A DNA stretch of 64,000 nt, taken from Podarcis erhardii. Lineage: Eukaryota. Within the stretch, counting starts at the first letter, position 1. Every line of letters starts with the position of its first letter. The notes under the pieces were generated by a model. That model was not told where the DNA came from and did no database searches. It was given only the letters and a program-made list of their open reading frames with translations. The position numbers were made by a program, and so were the translations under genes. This document shows positions 34,835-63,603 of the stretch, piece after piece. Location: the NCBI GenBank assembly GCA_964252035.1, contig OZ176200.1; one strand, given 5' to 3'.

Positions 34835-35861
34835 CAGAAGCTTTATTCTTTCAAATGGTAACTACCTAGACTCAGTACAATCTGTTGGAAGAGACTTTGC
34901 CCAAAAAACACAATGTAGAAGGCTCAGTCTAGTGCTGAATGGGGAGCATTTGCTGGCTAAAGGATGTGGTGGGGAGGTTGCTGTTCTCAGGAAACTATCC
35001 TGACCTTAGTTGACTATCAGGTTATGAGAATCAAGCGATGAAGCATCCCATTTGCCTTTCTGCATCCATCATCCCAGGTTGCTGCAGATCAGATCATCTT
35101 CCACGATGGACCAATAGCAAGTGATGACGAAAACAATAAATGTATCTGCAGCATAGAGCTCCCCGACACTACTTTTCCTTCACATCTGATGGTTATCCTG
35201 GAAAATGCTTATAAGAACCTGAGTACTATTTATGAAGAAGAAGCGAGCAAGGTAAGGGGGCACACTTCGGCACATAGACAGCATGCCAAATATTTATTCC
35301 CTGCCTTGAATCACTAATGCTGTCTAGTTCTGACTGTTTCCAGCAGCTGAACAATATAACACAACACAATCAGTGACTACAGTATCATATGAGCACTGAT
35401 CCAGAGCATATTTTCTACAGTGTTTATATTTGCTTACATGTAAGATTGGCTTGTTAAGAAATTGAACTGCATCCCTCTCATATTATTTCTTACAAGTCTG
35501 GCTGATGAAGAATTGATCAAGATTGGCTGATGAAGCATTGAACGAAACAGATTGGTTATCCGGAAACTCTGTTCTGGAGATATTTGGTGACTTTTGAATT
35601 ATTCTACCGCGACTGGTGAAGAAGATTTAGAGACTTTGGTTGCAATTTCTGATCATTTGTATTAGTCTATAAATAGTGTTTAGTGCCATTGTTATTGGCC
35701 ATCATGCTGTGTTATATTGTTCAGCTTGTCTATATTGCAACACAAGGGTCTGTTTACGGATTACTGTTCCCAGCAGCTGGCAACACTACACAGGGGAATT
35801 GTACTGGGGGGGGGGCGTGTGTGTGTGACAGAATGTGGCTCACAGATCTTTCAAGGCATGT

Positions 35862-35862
<1 letters not shown>

Positions 35863-35892
<30 letters not shown>

Positions 35893-36178
35893 AAGAAGAA
35901 GAAGAAGAAGAAGGGGAAGAAGAAGAGGAGGAGGAGTTTGGATTTGATATCCCGCCTTTCACTCCCTTTAAGGAGTCTCAAAGCGGCTAACATTCTCCTT
36001 TCCCTTCCTCCCCCACAACAAACACTCTGTGAGGTGAGTGGGGCTGAGAGACTTCAAAGAAGTGTGACTGGCCCATAGTCACCCAGCAGCTGCATGTGGA
36101 GGAGCGGAGATGCGAACCCGGTTCCCCAGATTACGAGACTACCGCTCTTAACCACTATACCACACTGGCTCTCTAACC
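35863..36178 (-). mobile_element. Squam3-like tRNA-derived SINE with expanded (TTC)n tail
   Basis: Reverse complement ggttagagagccagtgtggtatagtggttaagagc…; same family as 47045-47287; tail appears as (AAG)n at 35863-35935. Confidence 0.9.
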
Positions 36179-38118
36179 CTTCCTCCAAAGCACTGTTACT
36201 GGATAGCCCTGGTAAAATAGTCCACCACCACCCACTATAAACTAAATTTGTCAGTCACAGAAGTGCTCTGAGTTCTCCCATCTCCACACCCCAATGTTTG
36301 TGAAAGTGCAAAGTTGAAGTCTACTCATTGTCTGGATACACCTTCAAAACTGAGTGATAAAAGAATGGTTGTTCCAGAGAAAAGGACAAGCATGGAAGCA
36401 ACAATTGTAATGAAATGGTTGTTCATGATTTGTGGAAAGATGTTTTCAGTATCCTGCTAAGTGTGTGTCCTGCAAATTTCTCTAGGCTATGAAACTCCAG
36501 ACAGACTTGGTATCATTTAATGGTACCTTGGATAAATTAACCGCAACAGTGTGTCAGGTTGAAATGGAAGGTATCAAGGATGAAGAAACTTATCAAGACC
36601 TCCTAGAAAAAATTAATCATACAAAGCAATGGGCTCGGGATCTGACTACATAATGCTCTAAGTGCAACTGATGCGGGCATTACATCTTTAACCAAACAGG
36701 TAGGTACAAAATGTTTGGGAGCACAGCAGTTTGAATTGTGCTTGCACATTGTACTGAATACACCAAGAGTGGTGCTCCTGTTTGAGAGGATTCAAACCTG
36801 CTTTAGAAAGGGCATTTGGGGGACTGTTTGGGGCTCTTCAAGGAAACTTTTAAAATATTTCTGTGCAATGCTGAGTCCTCCATGGCTAGAGAGCTGCTTC
36901 AGGGAGCAGGAAAACATGGGATGAGAATTTTGCCTATTTTAATGCTTACCACTAGCATAAAGTCTCAAAAGAGCTTATTCCTTCCTTACCTTGTTATTTT
37001 TTTTAAAAAAACAGACACTTTCAACATTCCATGACTCATGGACCTAATTAAGAATGTTGTGAGCAAAGGCAAAAACCTCTGCTCCAAGGCATGTAAGATG
37101 GAGCCAAGCATCATTTTCATCAGGGATTTGGGGACTGGCAGTCCTACTAACTTAGTAGCACTAAGCCCATCCCTGAGCCAAAGGATGCTCTGCCAAGGCT
37201 CTTTGAGCACATGCTGCCACAACCACTATCCTCTTTCCTGGCCTCAAAGGTGATTTCTTAGCAATTGAGGACAGGGATGTGAGGAGGGAGGCTGTGCAGA
37301 ACACAAGTGCCTTCAAGCCTTTTGCAAGTGCTTGCACTGACTTCTTGCAGAAAGCTTAAGCTCACAAAACTGCAATCCTTTGGAATTCAAACAGTGAGAT
37401 ATTCATGCATCCCTAAACGTAATGACTAGATGCACCTAAGTCCTGTTCAAATGTTCTTCAAAAGTGGGTGAGAATAGCACATGGAGGGGAGGGGAGTTGA
37501 GTTGGGGCCATGCACTCACATCTCCATCCACAGCATCCCCACTGCCCCTCCTCTGACATACACACATTGAACGAGGAGGTCTGGAAAGGGGACCTCAGTG
37601 GCTGAGCATATTGTAGATCCTCCCTGCAATTGGAAAACCAGTACTAGCAGGTTTCCTGATCTCAAGGAGGATTCTAAGGGCATTCCCTTAGGCAACATCC
37701 ACACCATACATTTGAAGCACATGGCTTCCCCCAGAGAATCCTAGGAAATGTGTTTTGTGAAAGGTGCTGGGAACTGTAGCTCTGGGAGGTGTAAACTACA
37801 GTTCCCAGGACACTAACTGCCCAATTTCTGGTTGAAGTCAGAACTGGGCCTCTGGTTGATCTCCTTGATGGGCTGAGATATAATGGCTCAGGCAGGCCTT
37901 AAGATATCCTGGACCCAAGTTGTTCAGGGTTTTGAATTTTTCTGAAAACTGCAGGTTCTTTTCACACATAGTACATCTTTATTGTAAGATGCTTAGCTGG
38001 GGGGTAGGATTTGAGAAATAAAGGCATACCCCCTTAGCACTTCTGAGATATTTCCCAGTCATTCAGAAGCCTTGGAGAAGATTCAGCTATTAAGAACAAT
38101 CAGTCAATGTCTCTGGGT

Positions 38119-38240
38119 CATAGAATTATAGAGTTGGAAGGGACCGCAAAAGTCATTTAGTCCAACTTCCTGTAATGCAGGATCTTTTTGCCCAATGTGG
38201 GGCTTGAACTCATGTCCCAGAGATTAAGAGTCTCATGCTC
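38119..38240 (-). mobile_element. tRNA-Lys-derived head fused to a CR1 3' tail (SINE-like chimera, 5'-truncated)
   Basis: Reverse complement of 38190-38240 matches the 3' two-thirds of vertebrate tRNA-Lys(CTT) at about 45/51 (from memory); 38119-38189 is a CR1 3' end. Confidence 0.7.
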
Positions 38241-38274
38241 AATCCATATAATAACAAGAGAGGTAATTGGTTAC

Positions 38275-38277
<3 letters not shown>

Positions 38278-38336
<59 letters not shown>

Positions 38337-38345
38337 TGTTTGTGC
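38278..38345. repeat. Compound (CT)n(GT)n microsatellite
   Basis: Directly visible. Confidence 0.95.
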
Positions 38346-38754
38346 ATGCTTTAGCCTTTCTCATTCAATCACTCATGAAGCTGTCAAACACATCTACTAC
38401 CACAACACACAGGGAGACGCTGCAATAGAAAATTGCTTGGGGCTGTTCAATTAAACATGTGCTAATATGTTTCAGGTCTCCAATGTCTCCAGTATTGTGT
38501 GGGAACTAGAAAAGTTTGACGAGAACAATGTGTTGTTGACACATAGGGAAATAGCCACTCTCAAGAAACAACTGGCCGATTGCGAAGACTGTTACAAATC
38601 CCAATTCTAGCCTCTCTCCCTCTGGAAACGGGACTCCAGAGTTTGGTGAGTCCTACCGTGTGATTGTGGGCTGGAACTTCTCCTTACATTGGTTTGTCTA
38701 TAAGCTACATTATCATCACCATCATTATCATCACCATTATCACCGTCACCAGAA

Positions 38755-39090
38755 TTAATATTTGTTGCTTTTTTCATAAAAGTGACTGAAAGCAGCTTGC
38801 GCTGTAAAAACCACCATTAAAAACAAATATAAGAAAAATAATAACATCACGGCATAAAATGCTCATTGTATATAAAAGAGCAGATCCAAGTCAATCTGCC
38901 CCACTAAAAATGTGAGTGGAAGAAGACACCACAAACATAGTTAAGTACTCTCCCAAATGAAGGGCCAAAAGCCTAGGAGAATAAAAAAAATGTTTTTGCC
39001 TGGGACCTAAAAGCAGATAACGCAACCAGGCATGCCTCCCTGGGGAAAGCACTCTACAAACGGGGAGCCACCACTGAGAAGGCTTGCTTC
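38755..39090 (-). mobile_element. L2 LINE 3' end fragment
   Basis: aaaagcctagg…tgtttttgcctgg…gcactctacaaacggggagccaccactgagaaggc; similar to 12645-12945. Confidence 0.55.
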
Positions 39091-41227
39091 AGTCTGGTCA
39101 CCCCACAAACTTAACCCAGCTTCTTCTCACAACTAGCACATCCTCAGCGAGCTATTTGAGGCACCACCTGACCCAGGAAAATTTTACCGTCGTTTTAGCT
39201 TTGAGCTCTTTCACTAGATCAGTTCTCAGCCTGTACCAGTAGAAATCGGGGTAAAAGGAATTTCCTAATAATTACTGGATTACCTCCCACTTAATAGTTC
39301 TTTATATTATAAAGAGGCCTGCAGAGCCCTTCTGGTGCCACAGGGTCCCCCCGCCATTTGACATTAGACTTGAAAGAAGCATTCTGTTGCACTTACTAAT
39401 AGAATGTAGCATGTGCTTGTGCTTAGTGCTCACAGCAGTTCTCAGGTTTGCAAATGATCCCAAAAGGGATGATGACCACCTGCTTTAGTGAGAATTTTGG
39501 AAGGCAAACATGTAATGAACAGCTGATCAATGACAGTACAGAGGAGGAATTGGGAAGCATTATGCAGAGAAAACACAGCAGGGCAGAGGAGTCTGGGTTG
39601 GGGGCCTGACCCGTTTTCTAAATGCAGTGGGATAAAACTTGGCCGAGCTTTTGAAACAAGCAGAATGCCTAACATGGTCACAGAAAACAAAGATGATTTA
39701 GTTACTTATCTTGTAAAATTTATGCACCTCTTGATTGTTAAAAAATACACACAAAAAAACCTCAGAGCAGTTTGAAGGCGGAGAAAAACTTGTCAAGAGG
39801 AGCCACAAACAAAAGTAATTCCCTTTCTATTGCCTGGCAGGTAACTGCGACAACAAGGTGTTGATAAACATTAGCAAGCCACTTATAGTGAAACTCAACT
39901 GGCGAGGTTTAAGCTACAAATTCGGAGCTTGGGGAAAGGACTTTGCTGTTGGAAACAAGAATCCTGACGCATACTGAGTTGCCCCACTCAACACAGACAA
40001 GCGTTTGTTGGAAGCCTACTGCATCTACAACTCCTATTCCGACCTGCTGCTCTACAAAAACCAAATAGAGAAAAGCCTTTCTCAATTTGTTGGGTTCACC
40101 TGGAACTACACTAACTGTGGGCAGGGAAGCGGAACTATTTTGTACAACAGCAGCTTCTATTACAACTGCTACAACTCCAGGAACCTGTGCAGGTTGGATG
40201 TGGCAACCAGTAAGGTCCACCGCAAGGCCGTTGAAGACGCCGTGTTCAACAACTGGTACGCTTATAGCGGAATCAATTGGCAGGACTTTTGATTTCTCCG
40301 GGGATGAGAATGGACTGTGGCTCATTTACTCCATGGAAAAAAACAAGGGGAAAATAATGATTGGGCAGCTGGATCCCAATACTCTGACAATAGTCAAGTC
40401 ATGGCAAACCTCACTGTACAAGCCTAAGGCAACCGGCACCTTCATGATCTGTGGGGTGATGTATGCCTTGATGCGGGTGACTGAACACAACGAGAAGATC
40501 TTTTACAAATATGACACTAACACAGCCACAGAAGGCTCTATGGACATCATCCTGGAAAAGCTCACAGGCACACCGCAAAGCATAAGCTACAACCCCAATG
40601 ACCACAACCTATACATGTACAATGATGGCTGCCTGGTCAGTTATGATGTGATATTCTGACGCGTAGCCCTGTTCCAAAAGAGGAGTGTGATCAGTGTGAA
40701 AGAGCCAGATACTTTTGCGATGGTCGGTAAAAACCACTTCAGCTCACGAGACTTTGCCATAGCCTGAAAGAGAAACAAGGCCAGGCACGCACAACATTTA
40801 CCTATTGGCAAATACATATTTTAAATGGTAAAAGTCTTGATTGTAAGGCCAGCAGGCAGTTTCTATCTTTAAAGGGTATAATTAAACAAGCCCTTTTCTT
40901 CACAGTGCAGTCAAGTGTCTACCTGTGTGAAGAGAACATGTCACAGGGTTGGCTGCTCTCACCATTGAACCTCCACTGCCTTTCCCTCGCACCAAATGAT
41001 TCTGGCAGTAACAGGATTAGGGCTTTGGTGTGGAATCTGCTATAGATCATGCCACTGAGTAACTAGGAGTTCATAAACAGCAGGCATACACCCTGAAATC
41101 ACCTTGCGTGTGTTGTGTTTGTGTGTGTCTGTCCCCTCCGGCTAGTTATGACACCTTTTGGGCCTCTCCTCAGGTGTTAACATTTGCCATCTGGAGGACA
41201 TAAGTTCCACAACACCTGAGCTTCACA

Positions 41228-41430: not shown

Positions 41431-44400
41431 TCAGGATATAAGAGCTTGCACGTTCTTAAGGGCTGCGTCCGGATCCGCCTTGTATAGCATGAAGTGGCCT
41501 TGGACTTGCGCGGCACTGATCCGATCAGAGGCAGACACGGCCTGTTTGGCAAACTCCTCAGCCGCAGCTGCTGGCTGGTCTGGGTAGAACCTCTGGAACA
41601 TGCGCCCGAGCTGCCACTCTGAGCAGTACCCCACGTACTGCTTCAGGTCCACCCGGCCGGGCCGAACTAGTGCTGGATCGAGCCTGCAGGGAAAGAGGAG
41701 AAGACAAATGAGGCTCAGCAAATGCTCAGGTGGGAAATATGGTTCTCTATGCTCCTCTCACTTGGGGTATCATCTCCTTGTTCTCTCTCCAACCCCAAGA
41801 AGATACAGGGCTAGGGGAATCTGCTCTCCCCTTTATTTTTTTGAGCTCCTCTCTAAAAGAATATAAAGTAACAGTGCCTTGTAATTTAACTACACCCACG
41901 TCTTGCTGCACTCACCCATCATGCTCCTTTCTCCATACCTGCTAAGTTACCCATCCCCTCCTACAATCTCAGAGGAGCCTGCATGGAACCAGGAACAGTA
42001 AACAAGGACAGAACCAGATCTTCAGCTTCTGTGTTAAATGCTGCAAACCAGCATGACCAAAGGAGGCAGAAGTCCATATGTATATATACCCCAGACCACT
42101 CCCTAGCAAGCATGACCCCAGCATTACCCAAAGCCTTACCCAGCCAGTTTTAACTGGCTGACCCTGTCTGCTGAGCATTTGCTCTTCTACCCTGCACATG
42201 ACTCCTTCAGCACCAGGCTTACATGGCTGGCAGAGTCCTGTGCTTGTGGGAGAGGATGTGTCACAGGTCTTGGAGACTACAAGAGCCCCAAGATAAGATT
42301 CTCTTCCGTCTTCTCCTATAGTATCATCTTCTGGAACAGGAAGTGTATCTTCATTCCTGCTGCCTTCCTCCGTTTTATACTTAAAATAGTTACCAGCTGG
42401 TCCCCAGAAAGGCAGACTTTGCCTCATAAAGACAGCACTTCCAAGGGGTGGGACACAAACTGCCCTCCTCTGTTACACACTGCAATCTCCTTCTTGACTG
42501 AGTTACAAGGAAGCTCATGGAGTTGCCTTGTGTGAGCTAGGGATGGACGGATCAGTTTGTTTGGGGTCCATGTCCAAAGTGTTACAGGTGTTAAGTCTGC
42601 TCTGTTGCTTTTCCACTTTAAGATCTGTATTTTTTTAATTTAAAAAATCCATACAAAAATTCGTATTTAAAAATGCATTTTATTATAAATGCATATTTAA
42701 ATAGTATTTATCACAGGGTATGCATCTCTAAATTCATTTCCTCCTAAAAAAAAAAAAATATTAATGCATTTTGGGAACCAAGGACTGTATTGCAAAATTT
42801 GGAGGAGTGGGGAAGCTGAAGGATAATTGTGAATTCGTTTGGGAGGTACAAATTTGGCTAGCTTGCATGAAAATGCAGACAAAACAAAACTCTCCTCCAC
42901 CCCTAGCTTGTCTTCACCTCAAAAACACCAATGGAGACATCTTAGGCACTGTGTTACTTGAGGAATCCTTGGTCCCACCAAGGGAAGTGAACCCTTTGGA
43001 TTGAAGTGGCCTACCACCAAAGGGACTCCATTTGCAGGCTTCCTCCCAGCCACTGAGCAGTGAAGTAGGCTGATTTGCTGGAATACTGGTCTTCCTGTGT
43101 GTGTGTGTGTGTGTGTGTGTAGCTGTTTCCCTCGCAAAACAACAGTCCTGCTCCTGTCTGCGTTTGGGCTACCGAGGGATTCAAAAACCTGCCTCAGGGG
43201 ATACATAACTTCTCCTCGTGGCATGCTTTGGCACCGAATGTGAGAGGGTTGAGTGGAATGGGTTGGGCGAGGTTATCATGGTGTTAGTGTCCTCACCACA
43301 TGCCGGCTGGTGGTTTCAATGTGTCACCAGTGTGGGACTTCATGTTGTGAGGGGAAGGTGATGAAGGAATTTCTCTATGGGACTGTCAGTTGTTGCTACA
43401 TCGTCTCCTTCCCCTCCCCCTTTCCCCTTCCTACTTCTGTTACAACAGTTTTGATTTAGCTGCTAGAGGAATGTAGAATCCTAAACCACTGTAGACTCCA
43501 GCCTATCAGCCACTACCTTCCTTGGGTGCCATTAAATGATCATTCCCAAGCAAAAGGTTATCTTCAGCAGCTAACAACCTCTCTATCTGCCCCCATTTTC
43601 TGTGCAATGCTTCTGACCTGTCCACATAATTGGTGGTCATGAATACGATCCTTGCTTCGGAGGAAGCCACACCATCCAATGCGTTGAGAAGGCCACTGAA
43701 AGTCAGGCGTCCCATGCCTTGGTATGCGTTGGGGTCTGGAGGGAAACACAGCGGCACAGAGACAGCTCAGAGGGAGACATTATAGGTACAGTTGTGACCA
43801 AGGGCTGCCCAAATTCTGTCTAGGTTTATAGCCTTCCAGGGGAAGGGCAACAATCCCACTGTTGTGGTCTTATGTTACAGTAGTACCAGCTTTATGCTCC
43901 CTGCCTGATGTGCAGTGAAAACAAAACAAATTCCTTCCAGTAGCACCTTAAAGACCAACTAAGTCAGTTCTTGGTATGAGCTTTCGTGTGCATGCACACT
44001 TCTTCAGATACCTATCAGATACCTTCAGATGCTATCTGAAGAAGTGTGCATGCACACGAAAGCTCATACCAAGAACTGACTTAGTTGGTCTTTAAGGTGC
44101 TACTGGAAGGAATTTGTTTTGTTTTGACTATGGCAGACCAACACGGCTACCTATCTGTAACTGATGTGCAGTGGTTTGCGAAATGTTGCTGACACACTGC
44201 TGTCCAAATAGATACATGAAGGGGTCAGAGAAAATCATGCCACCTGGTGGCAAAATGCAAGTCGATAGAAAGCAGGACAATAAACAGTCAGGATCCTATG
44301 TCAAAAGAAGGCTGGCAAAAAGAAGTGCCTCTAGGATCTCTGCTGGCGAATCTCTTCCACAATGCAAAAGATGTAAACCTGTCCCCAAGCGCCTGTCTTG

Positions 44401-47400
44401 TTTCAAGTCTCTCTTTGTATATGGATAACTGATTTGGAATAGGTGTCACATTAAAGCCTGCAGATAATTATTTATCATTATATTTATTCAATCTATTGGT
44501 AGCTTGCTACGTAAAAAGTATCGAAGTAACTCACAAAGTTTTAAAGACATAAAGCAAAAAAACAACAACACTCAATAAGAAGAAGTATCTAAGTAACTCA
44601 CAAAATCTTAAAGACGTAAAGCAAAAAAAAAAAAAAAAATCAATAAGAAGAAAAGAGAGCAATACGTTGCAATTAAAAAGAAACTGTACAAAAATCCAGA
44701 GAACAGACACAGTAAAGCAGCAGGGGGGGAAACTTGGCAACAAAGCATATCATCCAGCAAATCATCACCATCTGTCAAATACCTGAGTTAAGTTTTTAAA
44801 GGTAAAGGTACCCCTGCCTGTACGGGCCAGTCGTGACCGACTCTAGGGTTGCGTGCTCATCTCACTCTATAGGCCGGGAGCCGGCGCCGTCCAAAGACAC
44901 TTCCAGGTCACGTGGCCAGTGTGACGAAGCTGCACTGGCGAGCCAGCACCAGTGCCGCACACGGAAACGCCGTTTACCTTCCCACTATAAAGTGGTACCT
45001 ATTTATCTACTTGCACTTAGGGGTGCTTTCGAACTGCTAGGTGGGCAGGAGCTGGGACCGAACGACGGGAGCTCATTCCGCCGCGGGGATTCGAACCGCC
45101 GACCTTACGATCAGCAAGTCCTAGGCACTGAAGTTTTACCCACAGCGCCACCCGCGTCCCGAGTTAAGTTTTTACCTGGTGCCAAAAGAATTTTAATGAT
45201 GGCCCCAGGAGGACCCCACTGTGAAGAGCATTCCACAAGTGGGGAGCCCTGACTGGAACACCCTCTTCCTTGTCACCACACTCCAGACCTCCCTCAGAGT
45301 GGGCATTAGTAGGAGGATAAAAAATCGAAGGGTCTGGGTAGGTTCATAAGGGAAGACATTTTCCAAAAGACATTGGTGTCCTGAGTCATTGACCCCTCTT
45401 TGTCAGCACCAGGTCACCAACCTGAATCCCATTGCAAAGTGCAGCTTGGAGGAAGGAGCTACTATTCAGCTCTCATTCCCCTCACTCTGAATAAACAATT
45501 AGCTTGGGAAAGTTGCTGCGGTGCAGCACTTAATCAGGATGCCCCCACAGAGTTACAACACAGGGGTGATGAACGCTTGGTCCCAGCTCAGTCAGAGGCA
45601 GCAGAAAAGGGCAGCCTGGAACAAAAGAGTGGGGAGGCGCCATCTGCCTGTCACTCACTTTCGGCAGCAAGATCCCGGCTGACGAAAGCAGCGTCCACGT
45701 CCTCCAGGAGGATGATGCTCTGTTGAGGAGCTACGCTCAGGAGGTGGTTAAGACGATCATCAGAGAGGCTGCGGTCGCTCAGGCTCAGGAGACAGATGCT
45801 GTACTGAAGTTCTCCAGCAAGAGCTGTGCTGTGATAGACAAAGGACAATGTTTCCACTGAAGAAAACTATGACAACACCTTGTGCAAAGGTGTAAGCTGT
45901 AGGGAGTGATTCCTGACCAGGAGCTACACAAGGTGCCCAGGGAGGTACCCTCAGAGACTGTATCCATGGTCAACAACTTTGAGAAAAGGGGGGTTTTGGG
46001 GGGGAAGGAAAGCTGAGGACATGGTACTCACATGAAACTGCTCTTTCCACAACCTGGGGGCCCGTACAGCAGGTATCCTCTCCGATAGGGGATTCCTACA
46101 GACAAAGAGGCTAGTCAAAAGGCAGAAAACTCAGCCTATTCCAACTTCTTATGAAATCTGAGCTACCATCATCACACCCAAGAATAAGAATGAGCTGATC
46201 GATGATTCCTTGAGCTCACCCCATAGTGGCCAATTCCAGCTGCTGATAAAGAAATATATTGCACAGGGCTCTGACAGAGTACCCAATTTCCTGCCACCCT
46301 AAAGGTTTAGGGCACCCTGAACAAAAGCACTACTTTAACCAACTTGGCAAACAGTTGATACAAAATATTGTGGCAAATGCCAGAAACTTAGTGAACGTTT
46401 GGTTTATCAGTACTTGGCTGTGCAGAGACTAGCCAGGACAGTCTCTTTCGTAGAAAGTAAGGGATAGTTCCTAATTCTCAAGGATTGGGACTATGCAGGG
46501 GCTGTTGTAGAGACTGCAATGAGGTAAGAAGAGGCTTCCCGCTGCACTCATAAGGAGAGAGAGGCATCATCACAGTTGGGAGTCCAAAGCAGGAAGAAGG
46601 CGCAGACAGTTTGGAAATGACAGGGATGCAGAAGGCAGCAGAGGTGCCTTTGTGCGCAATAGCAGAGGGCATTGAGAATGATAATCTGGGCTAAATAATG
46701 GGATATGCTGGCTCCGTAAGTGGCACCCCCCCTGCCTTAATTTAGCTCATAAAGGAAAAGCTCAGGTTGTGAGGGTATCTGAATGTCACTCCCTGAAAAG
46801 TAAACTCACCTCGATCAATGTACCACTTGGGGTTACCAGTGAACTCTTTCACATCCTGCACAATTCTCTCGGACACTCCTTTCTCAAGCACTACAGAGGT
46901 GAGCGGACGCCGTCGTCGTGGGAAACCAAATGGCCGCCATTCAGCCCCCATGGCTGTGTACATCACCGTCTTTCCTTCTTGCTGCCTCAGAGCCAATTCT
47001 TTGGCTGCAGAGAAAGGAACAAAGCTGGGGAAAGGGAGCTAACTGGTTAGAGAGCCAGTGTGGTGTAGTGGTTAAGAGTCTCGTAATCTGGGGAACCGGG
47101 TTCGTGTCTCTGCACCTCCACATGCAGCTGCTGGGTGACCTTGGGCCAGTCATACTTCTTTGAAGTCTCTCAGCCCCACTCACCTCACAGAGTGTTTGTT
47201 GTGGGGGAGGAAGGGAAAGGAGAATGTTAGCCACTTTGAGACTCCTTCAGGTAGTGATAAAGCGGGATATCAAATCCAAACTCTTCTAACTGCACATCTG
47301 GATACAGATGGGAAGGTGGTAGAGGGAAATTGCCTGTCTGCTAAATATAACAAAGAAGCAAGGAAGCATCACCAAAGAGAATGTGTCTATTTGGAGGATA

Positions 47401-48483
47401 GCCCCAGCTCTAAGTAGGGGTACTTAAGGAACTGGAGTTCTGTGAACTCTGATGCAGAGTGATATAATTTCTACCTCCTGGAATCAGGTGCAGAACAGAA
47501 CATAACTAGCCATCAGACTTTGGCCTTCTCTAAATTTTGAAATACAGTTTTCAGTTCAAAAAATGCCCAAAGGCATGCAAAATGCATAATTTGGAATAAA
47601 ATACATTTAGAAATCCATACAATGAGCTACAATCATAGTTATTTCATAAAAATATATTTAGGTATGTATTTAAACATGATTTTTTGCATATTTGTTTTTT
47701 AAAAATTGCAGATTAATGCAGAAACAGGATGGAATGGACTTACTAAAGAACACATGTAAAACAAACCTGGGCCCAGAAATAGACTGATCTATTCATCCCT
47801 AGTGCCAACATCATCATTAGATGTATTACCCACCCTTGCCAGCAGGCACCACTACAACCAAGGAGAGCTATTGTACCTTCCTGTAGGATGTTGAAGAAAA
47901 CTTCTCGGTTGCTACCGATTGCTGTGAAGGTGACAGATTCCCAGGGGGTGCCCGTATGCAGGTCAATCATTTGTTTCTCCCGGTTCCGTTCAATGCGGAT
48001 CCACTTCCTTTTATACCTGGAAGCAGAGCAGGGAACATGTGAACAGGAACTGGTGGTGGGGAGACAACTGGATGAGCAAGCGTGCACTATTCATGACCAC
48101 CACTTCCTTATTAGCCTTGCAATACTTCTGCCCATCCCAAAGACGTTCCATGGCCTCACTTACCAAATGAAATGGTTCCCAGGGCTGGGGATAAAGTCAA
48201 ACTTGGTACTGATACGGCCACTCTCATGCTGCAGGTATGAGGTCTCCACGCTCAGGTGCTGGGTGTGCTTTGCATGGTGAGAGATCCAGCTCAGCAGCCA
48301 GTGGTAACTCTTGTCCTTGCTTGGCACCTCTAGGGTGATCATACAATGCCGCCTGAAAGCCACCAAGCCAAGCTGTGCCCCTTTACGGGCCAGGGCCAAG
48401 GCTGTACCTACACCCACCAGGCCAAAGCCTGCTCCGAAGTATGGATTGTCCTTCAGGGCCGAGACAAAGTCAGAAAAGGGCAT
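41431..48483 (-). CDS. BCS1L: Mitochondrial AAA chaperone BCS1, 7 coding exons, 419 aa
   Basis: Exons 48483-48164, 48016-47877, 47004-46810, 46095-46032, 45828-45659, 43735-43618, 41683-41431. All GT-AG, total 1260 nt. [12 protein letters not shown] motif, Walker A GPPGCGKS, Walker B ILLEDVD, RPGR. Confidence 0.96.
42537..42906. mobile_element. Probable old non-autonomous DNA transposon
   Basis: Termini ctagggatgga / tccacccctag (10/11 complementary); AT-rich body resembling 47470-47760 in the opposite orientation. Confidence 0.4.
43973..44012 (-). ncRNA. Minimal type I hammerhead ribozyme motif
   Basis: GGTAT-CTGAAGA-A-GTGTG[CATG]CACAC-GAA-AGCT-C-ATACC: 5-bp stem I, full catalytic core, 5-bp stem II, palindromic stem III. 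Confidence 0.75.
44031..44070 (+). ncRNA. Minimal type I hammerhead ribozyme motif (one stem I mismatch)
   Basis: GCTAT-CTGAAGA-A-GTGTG[CATG]CACAC-GAA-AGCT-C-ATACC. Confidence 0.68.
44516..44650. repeat. Two-copy tandem duplication, period 67 bp
   Basis: aagtatc(g/t)aagtaactcacaaa…aaagac(a/g)taaagcaaaaaa…caataagaag starting at 44516 and 44583. Confidence 0.85.
44799..45160 (-). mobile_element. Sauria SINE (Squam1), full length, young
   Basis: Same subfamily as 15704-16065; perfect 14-bp TSD gagttaagttttta at 44785-44798 and 45161-45174. Confidence 0.95.
47045..47287 (+). mobile_element. Squam3-like tRNA-derived SINE
   Basis: ggttagagagccagtgtggtgtagtggttaagag…ggttcg…; short ctcttct tail; short ctaact(g) TSD. 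Confidence 0.9.
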
Positions 48484-53718: not shown

Positions 53719-56700
53719 ATGACAATGAGCACGGGAGCAGTTACAACGGAACCTGTGGGAGGAGACAAGATGAACGCACTATGCCAGGAGCTCTTGCTAC
53801 CCGGCTCAACAGATGCAGGAAATGAGAACAACCATAGCATCTCCAGTGAGAACTTAGTGGTGGGACAAAGCTTGCTTTTAACAGAGGCTTCTGTGGTAGG
53901 AACAGAAACTGCTGGTGTTGAAATATTTGTAGAAGCCGTGACTAGCAGCATGTCCCTCAGCAATCCTGGCAGCACTACAGGTATGTTGTGCCCTGATGGG
54001 TCTTTGTAACCATGTAAGAATGAACCACTTTGTCACTGTCCTCTTTTAGTGTGAGTGGTTTCTGTCATGTGGCATTTGTATTCTAAAGGAGCATCAGAAA
54101 GAAGCCTTAGGATCTTAGGTCTGGTACAAAAGGCCAAGAGACCTGTGAAAGAGTAGTCTGGCTTTTCTGCACCTGATACTGTATTCTGTAATTGTAAGTT
54201 GCTTTGATACATTTTAAGTAGTCAGCAGCGAATAAATGCAAGAAAAATGAGGGTAAAGTTTGTACATCTGTTATCTGGGAGAAGGGATATCTGCCACATT
54301 CTGTTATCTGCTCTAGGAATTGGAGAGAATGGAGATTGTGTTCTGATTGGGGTTCCTGGGTCCTTGTTATTATCAATTGTCCAGCAAATCACCAAGATAA
54401 GCTATGACTGTGGCTAGATTTGCTTGAGGTACTGTGAGCAGCTGAGATGGAAAAGGTGCAAGGTGTATTTGCCTAATAGGAGGAGGCAGGGATTTATTTT
54501 CACTGTATCTGATGGGATATTGCTGAGCTTGCAATAGGCATGAAGCTTACTGTGGATCTGTTTGCTGCACCTTCATAAGGCTGCTTATGGGAGCTACCCT
54601 TCAATGTCATGGTGATAAATATTGGACTAATGCCATGGAATATAAGGACCAGAGGCCTTACTATGTTCTTTGAGGTCTACAGTTTTGCCTGCAGTGCCTC
54701 TGCCATACTCAGTACAAATGACTGAACTATCTTTAGGACTAAGAAGCTAATGTCTTTATTAGGGCAAAGGGGCTGATACTGTGTGCCTCAACATCATCCT
54801 CTGCCCCCGTCTCTTTTAACAGTGCTGAGGAGCATGAGGGGTATAGAATATGGGAGAGTGCAGTGCGGTGCCTTGGAGGACATCAAGAGCATAGGATTTG
54901 CAGGGTACCATATTTACAGCAAAGTAGGGTAGGATGTTTAATGAAGGAGAAGACACCACTTACAGGGATGTTTAGGTGGTGGCATGTGGGAAGGGGGCTT
55001 AGGTGTTAAGGAGTTGGAAGCTTACAAGGGAGTGATTGGCATCAGTGATCTTGCAAAGGAATTTGAGAGGCAAGATTCATATAGGTGGTACACACTGAGA
55101 CAGGATAGTAAGGGACACGTTTGAAAATTAAGCAGTGGTCCTACCATTGCCCTCCTTCAAATCAAACGTGATATTTTCCTGTGAAAATGTTTGGGTGTGG
55201 TTCTAAACACCTGAAGCATGGAGAGTCCCCCCCCCCTCCGCTCCAACCCATTTGAATTGAATCCTGTGTTCTGATAACAGTTCTTATAGGTGACTCTCCA
55301 CCTATATGCTGATGGCTGTGACAGAGCTTTGGAGAATTCTTGCCTGTAAGCTGACACAGTTTTTAGTAATTTTTGCCTTGGACGAGATTTGAACTGAGGC
55401 ATGAGGTAGGTGTGTGTGGATTTTTTTCTACCTTATTTTCATCTGTTTTTTTAAAATATCTCCTTACAGAGGTCTTGGTTAAAGTTGTGGAGCTCTATTT
55501 CTGCGAACGGTGTGGGCAGAGCTTCTCTGACCCTGGCCTGCTTTCCCAGCATCAGTGCATTGAGCTTCCCAGAGGACAACTTGCAAGCATCCCTCAGCTC
55601 CAAGAGCTACCACTGGGCCTTACAAGCCAGAGCCTGGCTGCCTCTGGAGAGCAGTCGACAGTCTATGAGGCACAAGCGCAGGGCTTGCTGGATAGAAGCA
55701 GGCAGGACCCTGAATTCTGTACCGATCCCCTCTTGTGCCCTGTTTGTCAGGTGGAGTTTGCCTTGCCCACTGAGCTGAAGGAGCATTTCAGGGACCACCA
55801 AAAACCTACGGGTCCCCAAGTGTGCTTTGAAGAAGGCTGTCATTTCAGCTCGGAGGATCGCAAGCAACTCCGGGGGCACCTGCGGCACGTCCACCAGGTG
55901 TGCCCAGTCACCTGCACCTACCGTGGCTGCTCGCTCTTATTCCGAAGCCGAGAGGACATGGACCTTCACCGCAGAAGCCACTTCCCATTTCACTGTAGGC
56001 ACTGTGACTTCATCAGCGGCAACACCAAGCAGTTTGGGCAGCACCGACACAGCCATCTGCAGGAGGCCACACAGCAGGATGTGGAGGCAGCGCTGGAGAC
56101 GGGAGCAGTCGCTGAGAGCACTGAGCACAGCTTCACTGCCATAGTGGGGAAGCGGCTCACCCATCATCTGCTTCTAACATCAGGTACTTGGGGCTGAGGA
56201 AGAGACTAGGGTGGGCAGAAGGGGGAATGCTTGGGAGCGATGCCAGCCACCTACTTCTTAAAAACCCCACTGGATCCTAGGGGTCTCTTAACTCACTTTT
56301 GTGACAGCTTCCACTTCACTTAGAGACAATGCCATAGGCAGAGGTAAAGGGGTGAAGCTCCATTAGTCAGCCGGCTTTGTTTAATGATATTGTTTGTGGA
56401 TGTGGAAAATTATAGCATGAAAAGATGGTGGTAGATTCTGAATGGTGAACCATGGCAGGGAAAGGGATTTGAAATGGTGGGAAAGTTATGGGAATGTAGT
56501 AGCTGAGAGCAGCTCTTCCTTTGAAAATGCCCAAAGTTTAATCCTCCTCTCTGTCAAACCATGAAGGTCTTATTTCCACTTTTTATGTGTCTTAATTTTA
56601 ACCCTCTTTTCTAGTTCCTGTTCTACTTCCCTTTGCCTGGTTCTCAATATGCATTTATTTGCATGTTATCATTTGCTCATCTCAAGCCTTTTCTCTATAA

Positions 56701-59700
56701 AAAAATGGAGTCCCTGGTTTATATTTCATTTTCTTTCCAAGGAAGGGAAGAACCACTAAGCAAGGCTGAGAATTGCTTGGAAGTTCAGAGTGGTTGGGAT
56801 GTGACTGAAATGGAGCCTGGCCTGGGGGCACATGTTGGTAGCAGTCATGTGCCTCCTGAGGACTCAGGACCCAAGGAAGACACAGGGGATGAATTTCAGG
56901 AGGAGGAGGAGGTGGTGGTGGTGGTGGTGGAGAAGGAGAGCTTTGAGAAGAAAGCATCTTCTAAAAGAACAAAGGCTCAGCTGATCAAAGGTAGAGACTT
57001 GCATTAATTTGCGAGCAGTACAGTTTCTGGCATTTCTTAGAAAAGCTTTGCCAAACAGCAAATGCACTGGCATATTACAGCATGCCCTATATTTGAAGAG
57101 GGTCTCCCTGCCTGAACTGGTTGTTTTCTTTCCTGAGTTCAGAGGCAAACTACTTCACACATTAGTTCCCACTTCTGCTTGGAAATCTATTTGTGATGCT
57201 TTCTTTTCTTTGGAATGGGGTGGAGCATTGAATGCAATGGCTATTCTCCAGTGGGTGCTAACTGATTCCCAATTATCCCTAAATCTCCTGAGCTACTAGA
57301 AGCTCTTAAGCATAGGGTGGGGTTTTTAGATAAATTTTATATCTGTAAAAAAACCCCCTCTATTGTTATAGGCCATTGCAATAATTTTTTATTGTAGGGT
57401 AGAGAGAACATGGGAAGAGATTGCAGTTCGGAGCAACTGTTATTGCTAGAGATGAGAGGCAGGCAAAATAGACTTCTGGAGCATGACCAAAGGCCTTTTT
57501 ATTCATTCCTCTGCACTTAAGGCATGCTTCTCTCATTGCAGAAGGTGCGGTTGAGGACTCCAAATACCTGTTCAAGACCCACATGTGTCCGGAGTGCAAG
57601 CGTTGCTTCAAGAAGCGGACTCACCTGGTGGAACACCTTCACCTCCACTTTCCTGACCCCAGGCTGCAGTGCCCAAACTGCCAGAAGTTCTTCACCAGCA
57701 AGAGCAAGCTGAAGATCCACATGATGCGTGAGAACGGGGAGAAGGCCCACCGCTGCCCGCTGTGCCACTACAGCTCTGTAGAGAAGAATGCCCTCAACAG
57801 GCACATGGCCAGCATGCATGAGGACATCTCCAACTTCTACTCGGACGTCTACTCCTGTCCTGTGTGCAAGGAGACGTTCAAGCTTAGCCATGCCCTCAAG
57901 GAGCACCTGAAGACCCACAAGGCAGAGCCCAAGCAGCTGAGCTGCTTCCAGGCCGACTGCAGCTACTGCACCGAGGACCGCAAGGACTTCCTGCGGCATG
58001 TCAGGGAGGCGCACTACATCAAAGCGGTGGAGTGCAAGTACTATGCCTGCTCCCTGCTCTTCCCCACCGCGGAGGTCATGGAAGCGCATCGCAAGACGCA
58101 CTACGCCTTCCACTGCCAGCAGTGCGACTTCATCTGCTCCAACAAGCACGTCTTCCGCAAGCATAAGAAGCAAGGCCACCCGGGGAGCGAGCAGCTCCAG
58201 TGCAGCTTCTGCCCCTTTGCCACATTCAACTCTGTGGAATTCCACGACCACGTGGGCAAGATGCACGCCAGTGAGAAGATCCACAAGTGCACCGAGTGCA
58301 ACTTCGCCACGGCACACAAGAGGGTCCTCATCCGCCACATGCTGCTCCACACAGGCAAGTTTGCTTCTCTGCATGGGGACTCCTAGGGAAGCTCTGGAAC
58401 GTGTCAGCTTAGGTTAGACTTGTTTTTCCTGTACAAAATCCTGGCCTTCTGGGGCCAGGTTCTGCCCCACACCTCTTGTTGAAAGACCTAGATTCTGTAC
58501 TGGAAAGGGATTGAGATTCTTTAGTAAAATTTAGGCATATTTGCCAGAATTTCAGTTCTGGTTATAGAGTTCAACAGTCTTCAGTAGAAAGTTAGATTCC
58601 CTGACTAGACTTTTGTTGGAGTTTGCAATTTTTGGCAGCCCATTCCCTATTTTAGTTGCAATTTCCCACCAGCCTTTCCTTTTCCCAGCTAGCAGCCTTG
58701 GATGCAGCTAGGTGAAGGCGCTTAGAGCACTGTTGCATTTACCTGCCCACCCCAACCTCCCAGCAAGCCCCTCCAGATCAGGAAGGTCTGGCAAGCAAAG
58801 GGCAGAAACGCGGAGAAGGACTTTCCAGTTTGTGGCCCTGCATGGTGAAGGCACTTGCAGTGCCATGGTGATGAAGCGGCCAAGCAGCCCTAGCTTTCCT
58901 CTCCACTTTGGAGTGAGAAAGAGGCAGGGATTGGTGCTTAGCCAATGGGATCATTGACACTCACCTCTACACTTGCACTGTGGGAAGGCATGCTTGTTGC
59001 TTGTTAACGCTTACTTGAGGGCAGTGCCACACATGGTTAAAACCTGGGCGGCATCCATATGCAGTGACAGTAAAGCAATATGCTGTGGGAAGGAAGTGCT
59101 ACCATTTATTTGGGGGTTTTTTGTGGGGCAGGGCAAAGTAGGGCCTCATTTTAAATTGAAAATCTGCTGCCCTCAAGGGGCACTGCAGGCAGGACTGTCA
59201 ATCTACAGCTTCCAGTTTGCTCTGTGACTTTAGGAGAGAAGCCTCACAAATGCCAGCTGTGCGACTTCACTTGCCGAGACGTGAGCTACCTTTCCAAGCA
59301 TATGCTGACCCACTCTGATGACAAGAACTACATGTGCACCGAGTGTGGCTATGTGACAAAGTGGAAGCACTACCTGAATGTTCACATGCGGAAGCACACG
59401 GGAGATCTGAGGTACTGAGAGACCCCCTTCCCCTTCCCCTGGCTTGTTTCCTGTATCAGGAAGTAATCCGTATGCAGAGCTGAGGCTTTTCTCCTTCCAC
59501 CGTCTTGACCCACTCTTGTTTTGTGTGCAACCAGGTATCAGTGTAACCAGTGTTCCTACCGCTGCCACCGGGCCGACCAGCTGAGCAGCCACAAGCTGCG
59601 CCACCAGGGCAAGTCCTTGATCTGCGAGGTGTGTGGCTTTGCTTGCAAGCGCAAGTATGAGCTGCAGAAGCACATGCAGGCGAAACACTCCCAGAACTAC

Positions 59701-62700: not shown

Positions 62701-63603
62701 ACCGGGGAGAAGCCTTACAAGTGCCACCTGTGCCAGTATGCCTGCGCTGATCCTTCGCGCCTCAAGGTGAGAGCCGTCCATGCTCGGGATGATGGTTAAT
62801 AATGATTGCCTTGCCTGATTTGTCCACTCCCTGCCCAATATGTACCTACCTGTTTTCCCTCTTGGAGGGACTTAACTTTAGCTTTATTTGTTCTGGTTTT
62901 AACTTCCTGTTATAAGATTTAATTGTCACCAGTGGAGGCAAAACCTATCCAGTAAGATCGCCTTTCAGTGACAGACTATATGAAACATCTGTTGCTATCT
63001 GGGTTTTTTTCCAGCCCAGCTAGACTGGCTGCTTCCAGTCTGTGATTCTGGTCTCTTCCTCCTCTCTTGAAATCTTACAACTCTCTCTTATGCTTCAGCC
63101 AGTCTTGCCCCTCTCCTGCATGCATTTTGAAAGGTGGAAATGAAAAACAAAATACAAAACACAAAACTAAGGAGTGCCTCAGATGCGGTGTGTTAAGTCT
63201 GGCCTTTGTTACTGTGACTTTTCAGTGCCTTACTGTCCGTAGTATTCCCTCTCTGTCCTCATGGTTGCCTGCTAGGACCACTGATCCACTGGGTGAATTA
63301 TTTTTTTCTTTATTCAGTTTATATCCTGCCCTTCCTCCCAAAGGAGCCCAGGGTACCTGTAAAACATTTGCCTCACTGTTTAGTCTTCCTGGGTTCATAT
63401 AATAATGTTCCAATCAAGTAACTGGATTAAACCACCTGTGAGGTTGGTGTCCCGCATGTGTGACCCCCCTCCCATTTGTCTCCCTCTCTCTGCCCAGTAT
63501 CACATGCGCATACACAAGGAGGAGAGGAAGTACCTTTGCCCGGAATGTGGCTACAAGTGCAAGTGGGTGAATCAACTGAAGTACCACATGACAAAGCATA
63601 CAG
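53719..63603 (+). CDS. ZNF142: C2H2 zinc finger protein 142, 3'-partial (last exon lies beyond the window)
   Basis: Exons 53719-53980 (exon acceptor at 53670), 55470-56183, 56742-56990, 57542-58354, 59234-59411, 59535-62766, 63498-63603; phases consistent. FKTHMCPECKRCFKKRTHLVEHLHLHFPDP and YQCNQCSYRCHRADQLSSHKLRHQGK match human ZNF142 as recalled. Two donors are GC. The start codon and the 56183 donor are less certain. Confidence 0.9.

What the first reader, a model, noticed from the sequence alone, without database searches (positions are those of the whole stretch)
43905..44173. Perfect 93-bp palindrome with a hammerhead ribozyme in each arm, inside a BCS1L intron
Seen: arms 43918-44010 and 44033-44125 are exact reverse complements, and the whole 243-bp insert is flanked by a perfect 13-bp direct repeat. 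Each arm spells stem I (GGTAT/ATACC), core CTGAAGA+A, stem II GTGTG-CATG-CACAC, GAAA, a 4-nt palindromic stem III (AGCT) and a UC cleavage site (C at 44065 on +, 43978 on -). Known: minimal type I hammerheads with palindromic stem III occur in the terminal repeats of Penelope-like retroelements and need dimeric folding; inverted truncated repeat pairs are a typical Penelope insertion geometry. Inference: this is a very young, non-coding, ribozyme-bearing mobile unit, possibly a non-autonomous MITE- or retrozyme-like family. The copy with the intact stem I is in BCS1L sense. In the pre-mRNA it would be locked in a 93-bp dsRNA hairpin with its own antisense arm, which could silence self-cleavage while creating an ADAR/Dicer substrate or a DNA cruciform.
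Basis: partly seen in the sequence, partly recalled or inferred. Interest (0 to 1): 0.82.

Follow-up and report, generated by a model that had tools for sequence, protein, structure and literature searches.

The report
Young head-to-head Penelope retroelement insertion
The perfect palindrome with a hammerhead-ribozyme motif in each arm is real. It is the ordinary scar of a very short, recently inserted Penelope-like retrotransposon in a lizard BCS1L intron, a known insertion type with no shown effect on the gene.

Summary
Observation confirmed. Arms 43918-44010 and 44033-44125 are exact reverse complements with a 22-nt spacer. The 243-bp insert is flanked by a perfect 13-bp target-site duplication. 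A related lizard (run X8) carries the precise empty site, so the insertion is young.

Each arm carries a minimal type I hammerhead motif. These are the only two descriptor hits in 64 kb, against 0 in 100 shuffles. The motif shows every sequence feature published for Penelope-like element (PLE) min-HHRs.

The layout is the textbook PLE layout: two severely 5'-truncated copies head to head, with a 35-bp "tail" at one end only. The arm ends lie +60 and +95 nt from the ribozyme cut site. The two reverse-transcription start sites of the Anolis Poseidon element lie at about +55 and +89.

The sequence belongs to a very abundant family, with thousands of contigs per run in several species. The scan has noted the same palindromic mini-inserts at other loci of this genome.

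The MITE and retrozyme-like readings are not supported. At this locus the RNA should fold into a hairpin of about -189 kcal/mol, so self-cleavage is unlikely. This is a known kind and of low interest.

The parts
43905..43917 (.). Left copy of the 13-bp target-site duplication (CTGATGTGCAGTG)
   Evidence: Exact direct repeat. The X8 contig joins 43904 directly to 44161, which is the empty site with a single copy of the repeat (record 25).
43918..44010 (-). Inverted, 5'-truncated element copy without tail. Its outer end (43918) lies +60 nt from the ribozyme cut site.
   Evidence: Exact reverse complement of 44033-44125. An X1 contig bridges flank to arm with 0 differences (record 1).
43973..44012 (-). 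Minimal type I hammerhead motif in BCS1L sense, with 5-bp stem I GGUAU/AUACC. The predicted cut is after C at 43978.
   Evidence: Descriptor hit. Sequence read. Monomer fold.
44011..44032 (.). 22-nt head-to-head junction. It holds a reiterated 10-nt tip motif (TCAGATACCT at 44004-44013 and 44015-44024, which reads AGGTATCTGA on the minus strand).
   Evidence: Direct repeat D4 and sequence. Interpreting it as template slippage or microhomology joining is inference.
44033..44125 (+). Direct, 5'-truncated element copy (the part shared with the inverted arm)
44031..44070 (+). Minimal type I hammerhead motif antisense to BCS1L. Stem I is weakened (GCUAU, 3 bp plus a mismatch). The predicted cut is after C at 44065.
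   Evidence: Descriptor hit only when stem I is allowed at 3 bp. Sequence read.
44126..44160 (+). 35-nt PLE 'tail', AC-rich (CAGACCAACACGGCTACC), present at this end only. The element's 3' end lies +95 nt from the cut site.
   Evidence: No inverted partner. Many family contigs diverge into unrelated flanks at 44162/44163 (table 7). An X1 contig bridges tail to flank with 0 differences (record 8). A one-sided 30-40-bp tail is described for PLEs.
44161..44173 (.). Right copy of the 13-bp target-site duplication
43736..45658 (-). BCS1L intron that hosts the insertion. Donor GTGAGT is at 45658-45653 and acceptor AG at 43737-43736. The insert edge is about 180 nt upstream of the 3' splice site.
   Evidence: Flanking exons join in frame as ...AAE|[13 protein letters not shown]. 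Pfam BCS1_N and AAA_lid_BCS1 hit minus-strand exons. The probable RNA run X17 covers the stretch only up to about 43735 (table 2).

Best explanation
This is a dead-on-arrival insertion of a Penelope-like retroelement (PLE). The element's endonuclease made nicks staggered by 13 bp in the BCS1L intron. Both nicked strands then primed reverse transcription on the 3'-terminal part of PLE RNA.

One cDNA started at the distal internal start site. It gave the copy with the 35-nt tail (44033-44160, plus strand). The other cDNA started at the proximal start site, 35 nt further in. It gave the tail-less copy (44010-43918, minus strand).

Both cDNAs stopped just after copying the hammerhead motif. They were joined head to head through a 22-nt junction with a stuttered 10-nt tip motif. 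Gap repair produced the 13-bp target-site duplication.

The hammerhead motifs are passengers. They belong to the element's terminal region, where in full-length tandem transcripts they can act as protein-assisted or dimeric ribozymes. At this locus each strand has only one sense motif, stem III cannot form in cis, and the transcript folds into a 93-bp perfect hairpin. No self-cleavage is therefore expected.

Shown here: the anatomy, the TSD, the empty site, the family abundance and the motif features. Inferred: dual-strand priming, the two start sites, the joining mechanism and the inactivity.
For: - **Anatomy.** Exact 93-nt arms, a 22-nt spacer, a 13-bp TSD and a 35-nt one-sided extension.
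- **Empty site.** In run X8 (organism E) one single-copy-depth contig joins 43904 to 44161, with 7 differences in 445 flanking bases. X1 contigs bridge both insert/flank junctions with 0 differences.
- **Abundant family.** About 7,500-9,900 contigs at 90% identity or more were laid on the arms in each of three DNA runs, and 535 in a probable RNA run. Contigs run into unrelated flanks at the unit's 3' end (44162/63) and at the stem I boundary (44011/12). Many other head-to-head junctions appear, such as 44011 joined to 44046-44049.
- **One source for both arms.** Both arms share a minority family variant, G at 44078 and C at 43965, whereas 68-99% of family contig depth has A/T there (table 3).
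- **Motif.** It shows every sequence feature listed for metazoan PLE min-HHRs: an extra nt between A9 and 10.1, G10.1-C11.1, a long helix II, a 4-5-bp helix I, and palindromic 15.2-16.2. Opposite-strand pairs 100-700 bp apart were also reported (PMC4209133). There are two descriptor hits in the window against 0 in 100 shuffles.
- **Anolis Poseidon (PAc).** The protein cleaves and extends both DNA strands. Reverse transcription starts at two internal sites about 34 nt apart in an AC-rich region. The tail spans about nt 85-119 and the HHR cut is at nt 30, which gives +55 and +89. Unprocessed RNA is the dominant template (PMC11167929). Here the arm ends lie at +60 and +95 and the tail is 35 nt.
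- **Same core layout in PAc.** The PAc consensus junction read by eye shows CTGAGGA, one nt, a 6-bp helix II, GAAA, CG, T, C.
Against: - No full-length copy with a reverse transcriptase/GIY-YIG ORF that shares this terminus could be examined. No eukaryotic genome collection is available, and the metagenome, viral and prokaryote scans found nothing relevant. The link to an autonomous PLE therefore rests on architecture and literature, not on sequence homology shown here.
- The terminus has stops in all frames. In PAc the ORF starts inside the HHR, so this family may be non-autonomous or a different PLE clade.
- The target site is not AT-rich, unlike the PAc preference.
- The Rfam hammerhead models do not score the motif, and no cleavage data exist.
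- Many family copies seem to end exactly at stem I (loose ends at 44011/12). This could also mean a discrete short unit rather than random 5' truncation.
Confidence: 0.8

Rival explanations
1. Same PLE origin, but the palindrome arose from a single priming event followed by a strand switch. This could be snap-back of the nascent cDNA, or L1-style twin priming, rather than independent priming from both nicks.
For: The arms are identical and share a minority variant, as expected if one is copied from the other or from the same RNA molecule. The junction holds stuttered 10-nt repeats typical of template switching.
Against: A snap-back copy has no reason to stop exactly 35 nt short of the 3' end. 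That distance equals the published spacing of the two PLE RT start sites. The PAc protein is shown to extend both strands in vitro.
Confidence: 0.12
2. The palindromic unit, or the 128-nt hammerhead unit, is a non-autonomous mobile family in its own right. It would be a short PLE-dependent SINE-like or retrozyme-like element rather than a random truncation product.
For: Family contigs end at discrete 5' (44011/12) and 3' (44162/63) boundaries in similar numbers. A tandem-type joint (44163 back to 44034) exists. One head-to-head joint (44011 to 44049) has summed depth of about 500-1200 in three species, so that junction is itself multi-copy. The terminus is non-coding. A 2026 preprint argues that animal non-LTR retrozymes derive from PLE pLTRs, with reptile consensus lengths of about 176 bp.
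Against: This locus is head to head, not tandem, so it cannot give a dimeric ribozyme or a circular RNA. The inverted repeats are not terminal on the right side, so it is not a MITE. The shown joints have many different breakpoints (table 5), as expected from independent truncations. Contigs cannot give copy structure.
Confidence: 0.06
3. Assembly artefact: the inverted arm was created by mis-joining reads of a high-copy repeat.
For: PLE tandem/inverted structures are known to trouble short-read assemblies (PMC8557442). No listed contig spans the whole insert.
Against: Run X1 holds 0.89 of the sampled 31-mers of the stretch. Single-copy-depth contigs cross both junctions: left flank into the inverted arm's outer end, and tail into right flank (records 1 and 8). 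Together these require opposite orientations at the two ends. A perfect TSD and a precise empty site in another species fit a real insertion. X1 may be the source sample, so this is not fully independent.
Confidence: 0.02

Closest known systems
Minimal hammerhead ribozymes of metazoan Penelope-like elements (min-HHR; Cervera & de la Pena 2014, PMC4209133)
   Same: CUGANGA and GAAA boxes; U16.1-C17; one unpaired nt between A9 and G10.1; a G10.1-C11.1 pair; a long helix II (5-7 bp); a short open helix I (5 bp); no helix III hairpin but a palindromic AGCU that can pair only between two copies. The motifs are mostly found as single or opposite-strand copies in truncated elements.
   Different: The specific sequence family (helix II GUGUG-CAUG-CACAC) was not matched here to any published or library entry. 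Neither cleavage nor covariation was tested here.
Poseidon_Ac (PAc) of Anolis carolinensis and its in vitro integration properties (Frangieh et al. 2024, PMC11167929)
   Same: The HHR lies a fixed distance upstream of two alternative RT start sites about 34-35 nt apart (PAc +55/+89; here +60/+95). The start region is AC-rich. Both DNA strands are used as primers. Uncleaved RNA serves as template.
   Different: There is no obvious sequence similarity by eye to the PAc consensus. In PAc the ORF starts within the HHR, whereas here all frames are closed. The PAc target preference is AT-rich (ATT), and the target here is CTGATGTGCAGTG.
Canonical PLE insertion architecture (Evgen'ev & Arkhipova 2005; Craig et al. 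2021, PMC8557442)
   Same: Severe 5' truncation, an adjacent inverted 5'-truncated copy forming inverted repeats, and a 30-40-bp tail at one end only.
   Different: This is a miniature version. Both copies are only 93-128 nt, with no ORF and no pLTR tandem.
L1 twin-priming inversions
   Same: A retroelement insertion with an inverted 5' segment, flanked by a TSD.
   Different: In L1 the inverted and direct parts are mostly consecutive segments of the RNA and end in poly(A). Here the two parts are complete duplicates of the same segment, and their ends differ by the PLE tail.
Animal non-LTR retrozymes / MITEs
   Same: Short, non-coding, HHR-bearing (retrozymes); inverted repeats and a TSD (MITEs).
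   Different: Retrozymes need tandem direct units. MITEs have terminal inverted repeats at both ends and move as DNA. This insert has a one-sided 35-nt non-inverted end and retroelement-type truncation.

Membership tests
PLE-type minimal type I hammerhead (min-HHR) | Catalytic boxes C3-U-G-A-N-G-A9 and G12-A-A14, A15.1, U16.1, H17 | tested here: met
   CTGAAGA ... GAAAGCTC on both strands.
PLE-type minimal type I hammerhead (min-HHR) | Unpaired nucleotide between A9 and 10.1, and a G10.1-C11.1 pair | tested here: met
   A at 44043/44000, then G...C closing helix II. The feature list is from PMC4209133.
PLE-type minimal type I hammerhead (min-HHR) | Long helix II and short open helix I (4-5 bp) | tested here: met
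   Helix II is GUGUG/CACAC, 5 bp, and the 14-nt stretch is fully self-complementary. Helix I is 5 bp on the minus strand and 3 bp plus a mismatch on the plus strand.
PLE-type minimal type I hammerhead (min-HHR) | No helix III hairpin; palindromic 15.2-16.2, so helix III forms only between two copies | tested here: met
   AGCU. A modelled double hammerhead is possible at -17.7 kcal/mol, but an extended duplex dimer is more stable at -37.2.
PLE-type minimal type I hammerhead (min-HHR) | Self-cleavage after H17 (as a dimer or protein-assisted) | not testable with these tools
   This needs in vitro transcription. The contigs cannot show RNA ends.
PLE-type minimal type I hammerhead (min-HHR) | Covariation in helices across family members | not testable with these tools
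   No family alignment could be obtained. Among contigs at least 90% alike, no variant above 10% lies inside the motif (table 3), which says nothing either way.
Penelope-like element insertion | The family's full-length copies encode a telomerase-like RT plus a GIY-YIG endonuclease | not testable with these tools
   The 243-bp insert has no ORF. No eukaryotic genome collection is on hand, and the scans found nothing relevant. The only RT ORF in the window (4311-6404) lacks a GIY-YIG hit and is unrelated to the insert.
Penelope-like element insertion | 5'-truncated copy with an adjacent inverted 5'-truncated copy | tested here: met
   described in PMC8557442.
Penelope-like element insertion | 30-40-bp tail at one end, corresponding to two RT start sites | tested here: met
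   A 35-nt extension at 44126-44160 at the right end only. Compare.
Penelope-like element insertion | Target-site duplication and a demonstrable empty site | tested here: met
   13-bp TSD and an empty-site contig in X8 (record 25).
MITE | Terminal inverted repeats at both ends directly abutting the TSD | tested here: not met
   On the right side 35 non-inverted bases lie between the arm and the TSD.
Non-LTR retrozyme | Two or more HHR units in tandem direct orientation, allowing dimeric cleavage and a circular RNA | tested here: not met
   The two motifs are on opposite strands.
miRNA precursor (Rfam MIR1222, MIR2950, mir-466, mir-1 hits) | Score at or above the family's gathering threshold | tested here: not met
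   Scores of 68.4 against 90, 59.3 against 76, 40.6 against 85 and 36.7 against 45.6. These are generic long-hairpin matches on both strands, and none passes at gathering.

The most novel reading that the evidence does not exclude
Perfect head-to-head PLE mini-inserts like this one, transcribed inside housekeeping-gene introns, might form a genome-wide set of long perfect dsRNA hairpins. These could feed ADAR editing or small-RNA production against the active PLE family, a built-in self-silencing by-product of the PLE integration mode. Separately, some head-to-head units may themselves be amplified as non-autonomous elements, since one junction type is multi-copy in three species.
Probability: 0.06. 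Interest if true: 0.5.

Novelty: new member of a known kind. Interest (0 to 1): 0.15.

Why it matters
By itself it matters little. It is one more copy of a known insertion type in a genome that holds very many.

It has modest value as a clean natural example. The perfect arms, the intact TSD and the empty allele in a relative let the two arm ends be read to the base. They lie 35 nt apart at +60 and +95 from the ribozyme site. That is what the in vitro model of PLE integration predicts: both strands primed, with two internal RT start sites.

A genome-wide tally of such mini-inserts could test that model in vivo. The insert is also a presence/absence marker between closely related lizards.

Tried and rejected
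- **Rfam.** At gathering thresholds over the whole window, and at E<=10 on 43500-44600, there is no hammerhead family. Only sub-threshold miRNA hairpin hits appear, rejected as generic hairpin matches.
- **Loose core-box pattern (CTGANGA...GAAA...TH).** It gave 14 hits against 8.7 expected and is not informative by itself. The hit at 60719-60759 lacks helices. It was replaced by a full descriptor.
- **More copies in the window.** blastn with word size 7 and 3-mismatch pattern searches found none beyond the two arms.
- **Family copies in public collections.** The metagenome scan returned 20 loci, all chance matches in bacterial-looking sequence. The viral contigs and genome-contig scans returned 0. 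No family alignment, covariation test or covariance model was therefore possible.
- **A full-length PLE noted earlier in this genome.** Word searches of earlier findings returned none.
- **MITE, retrozyme and miRNA-precursor readings.** These were considered and rejected (see membership tests).
- **Spliced model.** The BCS1L exons were scanned one by one by reference. I did not build a joined spliced protein.
Full report
**Observation**

The region was read directly and checked with the repeat finder and a script.
- Arms 43918-44010 and 44033-44125 are exact reverse complements, 93 of 93. They reach 97 nt with one mismatch.
- The arms are separated by 22 nt (44011-44032).
- CTGATGTGCAGTG occurs at 43905-43917 and again at 44161-44173, so the insert is 43918-44160 (243 bp).
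- The structure is not symmetric. The plus-strand arm runs on for 35 nt (44126-44160) that have no inverted counterpart.

**The hammerhead motifs**

Each arm reads, in its own sense: stem I, CUGAAGA, one extra A, GUGUG-CAUG-CACAC, GAA, AGCU, C, AUACC.
- On the minus strand stem I is GGUAU/AUACC (5 bp) and C17 is at 43978.
- On the plus strand the 5' strand is GCUAU (3 bp plus a mismatch) and C17 is at 44065.
- A descriptor requiring both boxes, helix II, a palindromic helix III core, U-H and helix I finds only these two sites in the 64-kb window and none in 100 dinucleotide shuffles.
- A loose box-only pattern is not significant: 14 hits against 8.7 expected.
- Rfam's hammerhead models do not score the motif at gathering or at E<=10. 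The only hits are sub-threshold miRNA-hairpin models that match any long hairpin. I read this as expected for a motif without helix III. The original description of these motifs used a structure descriptor and not covariance models.

**Gene context**

Minus-strand ORF pieces carry Pfam BCS1_N (48160-48483 and 46742-46996) and AAA_lid_BCS1 (41431-41721).
- The exon ending at 45659 has donor GTGAGT at 45658-45653. The exon starting at 43735 has acceptor AG at 43737-43736. The two join in frame as ...AAE|[13 protein letters not shown].
- The insert therefore sits in a 1,923-nt BCS1L intron, about 180 nt upstream of the 3' splice site.
- Exons were scanned one by one.

**A real, young insertion of a very abundant family**

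- In run X1, which may be the source sample, single-copy-depth contigs cross left flank into the inverted arm (43700-43940) and tail into right flank (44138-44400) with 0 differences.
- In run X8 (organism E) one 1,208-nt contig joins 43904 directly to 44161. It has 7 differences over 445 flanking bases. This is exactly the empty site with a single copy of the 13-mer.
- The arms attract about 7,500-9,900 contigs at 90% identity or more in each of three DNA runs from different species labels.
- They attract 535 contigs in X17. X17 covers the neighbouring BCS1L exon but not the intron, so it is probably RNA.
- Family contigs run into unrelated sequence at 44162/63, the element's 3' end, and at 44011/12, the stem I boundary.
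- Many other head-to-head joints with different breakpoints are seen, such as 44011 joined to 44046-44049.
- Both arms carry the same minority variant, G at 44078 and C at 43965, where most family depth has A/T. This points to a single source for both arms.

**What it is**

The published description of Penelope-like elements fits point by point.
- Cervera & de la Pena 2014 list the following for metazoan PLE min-HHRs: a nucleotide between 9 and 10.1, a G10.1-C11.1 pair, a long helix II, a 4-5-bp helix I, palindromic 15.2-16.2, presumed action as dimers, low activity in vitro, and mostly single motifs or opposite-strand pairs 100-700 bp apart in truncated elements.
- Craig et al. 2021 describe high 5' truncation, an inverted 5'-truncated copy immediately adjacent, and a 30-40-bp tail often at one end only.
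- Frangieh et al. 2024 show for the Anolis Poseidon element that the protein cuts and extends both DNA strands. Reverse transcription starts at two internal sites in an AC-rich region, and the tail is the sequence between them, about nt 85-119 with the HHR cut at nt 30. HHR mutants do not affect insertion.
- In this locus the tail-less arm ends 60 nt and the tailed arm 95 nt after the cut site, against about 55 and 89 in PAc.
- The tail is 35 nt and contains CAGACCAACACGGCTACC.
- Both arms include the whole ribozyme upstream of the cut, so the template was uncleaved RNA.
- The PAc consensus junction, read by eye, has the same core layout but no evident sequence similarity. Its ORF starts inside the HHR, whereas here all frames are closed.

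**Mechanism proposed (inference)**

Nicks staggered by 13 bp were both used as primers on the same PLE RNA species. One primed at the distal start site and the other at the proximal start site. Both cDNAs ended just beyond stem I. They were joined through a 22-nt junction that contains a stuttered 10-nt tip motif (D4). A single priming event with snap-back or twin priming is the main mechanistic rival. It does not explain why the shorter arm stops exactly one tail length short.

**Activity at this locus**

The insert RNA folds into one hairpin of -187.0 kcal/mol on the plus strand and -189.5 kcal/mol on the minus strand.
- A single motif folds to -10.1 kcal/mol with stems I and II only.
- Two copies modelled as a double hammerhead score -17.7 kcal/mol, while their minimum-energy dimer is an extended duplex at -37.2 kcal/mol.
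- With one sense motif per strand, no tandem partner and a competing perfect hairpin, self-cleavage here is unlikely.
- ADAR, Dicer or cruciform effects are possible in principle but untested. No RNA run covering this intron was available.

**Limits**

No family alignment, covariation test or full-length element could be obtained.
- The metagenome scan gave only chance bacterial matches.
- The viral and prokaryote collections gave nothing.
- The tie to an RT/GIY-YIG-encoding master element is therefore by architecture and literature only.
- A non-autonomous PLE-dependent short family cannot be excluded.

**Earlier scan notes**

Notes on this same lizard genome list many hammerhead/Penelope observations, including the same palindromic mini-insert geometry at other loci. 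At least one follow-up reached the same reading. I used these as leads only.

**Verdict**

The thing is an ordinary, known insertion type, not a new MITE-like or retrozyme-like element.

Noticed in passing
window 44004-44032: The head-to-head junction contains the 10-nt motif TCAGATACCT twice (44004-13, 44015-24), followed by a third partial copy (TCAGATGC). On the minus strand the hammerhead's stem I/core tip AGGTATCTGA is therefore reiterated about 2.8 times. The element's 3' end (CCTATCTGTAA) resembles the same tip (GGTATCTGAAG), which hints at microhomology-guided template switching.
   Followed up: partly
window 44011 joined to 44046-44049 (contigs of runs X1, X4, X8, tables 5 and 5c): One head-to-head junction type has summed contig depth of about 500-1200 in three species, against about 13 for single-copy sequence. 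In it a full inverted arm is joined, via A, AC or ACA, to a direct arm starting inside helix II. That palindromic junction is therefore itself multi-copy. It is either a preferred switch point or an amplified head-to-head unit.
   Followed up: no
window 44163 back to 44034 (run X8, table 5c): A 'goes back' joint shows that tandem head-to-tail copies of the same unit exist elsewhere in that genome. The 3' end is followed after one base by the hammerhead tip.
   Followed up: no
window 4311-6404 (-): A 697-aa open frame with a Pfam RVT_1 reverse transcriptase domain and no GIY-YIG hit, in an AT-rich, strand-skewed stretch (GC 0.36). It is probably a LINE fragment and is unrelated to the insert.
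   Followed up: partly
window 59521-62799 (+) and 55373-56197 (+): Large ZNF142-type C2H2 zinc-finger exon(s) (Pfam zf-C2H2_ZN142, zf-C2H2_ZNF142_18). A HEAT-repeat ORF lies at 2444-3208 (-). The window holds a gene neighbourhood with BCS1L next to ZNF142.
   Followed up: partly
window 40087-40659 (+): A 190-aa ORF lies just downstream of the last BCS1L exon. An earlier first-reader note calls 35078-40659 an OLFM4-like pseudogene between RNF25 and BCS1L. I did not check this.
   Followed up: no
window 43100-43140: A short (CA/TG)n-type microsatellite (translated as HTHTHTH / CVCVCVC in the ORF list) lies in the next BCS1L intron downstream (in gene sense) of the one holding the insert.
   Followed up: no
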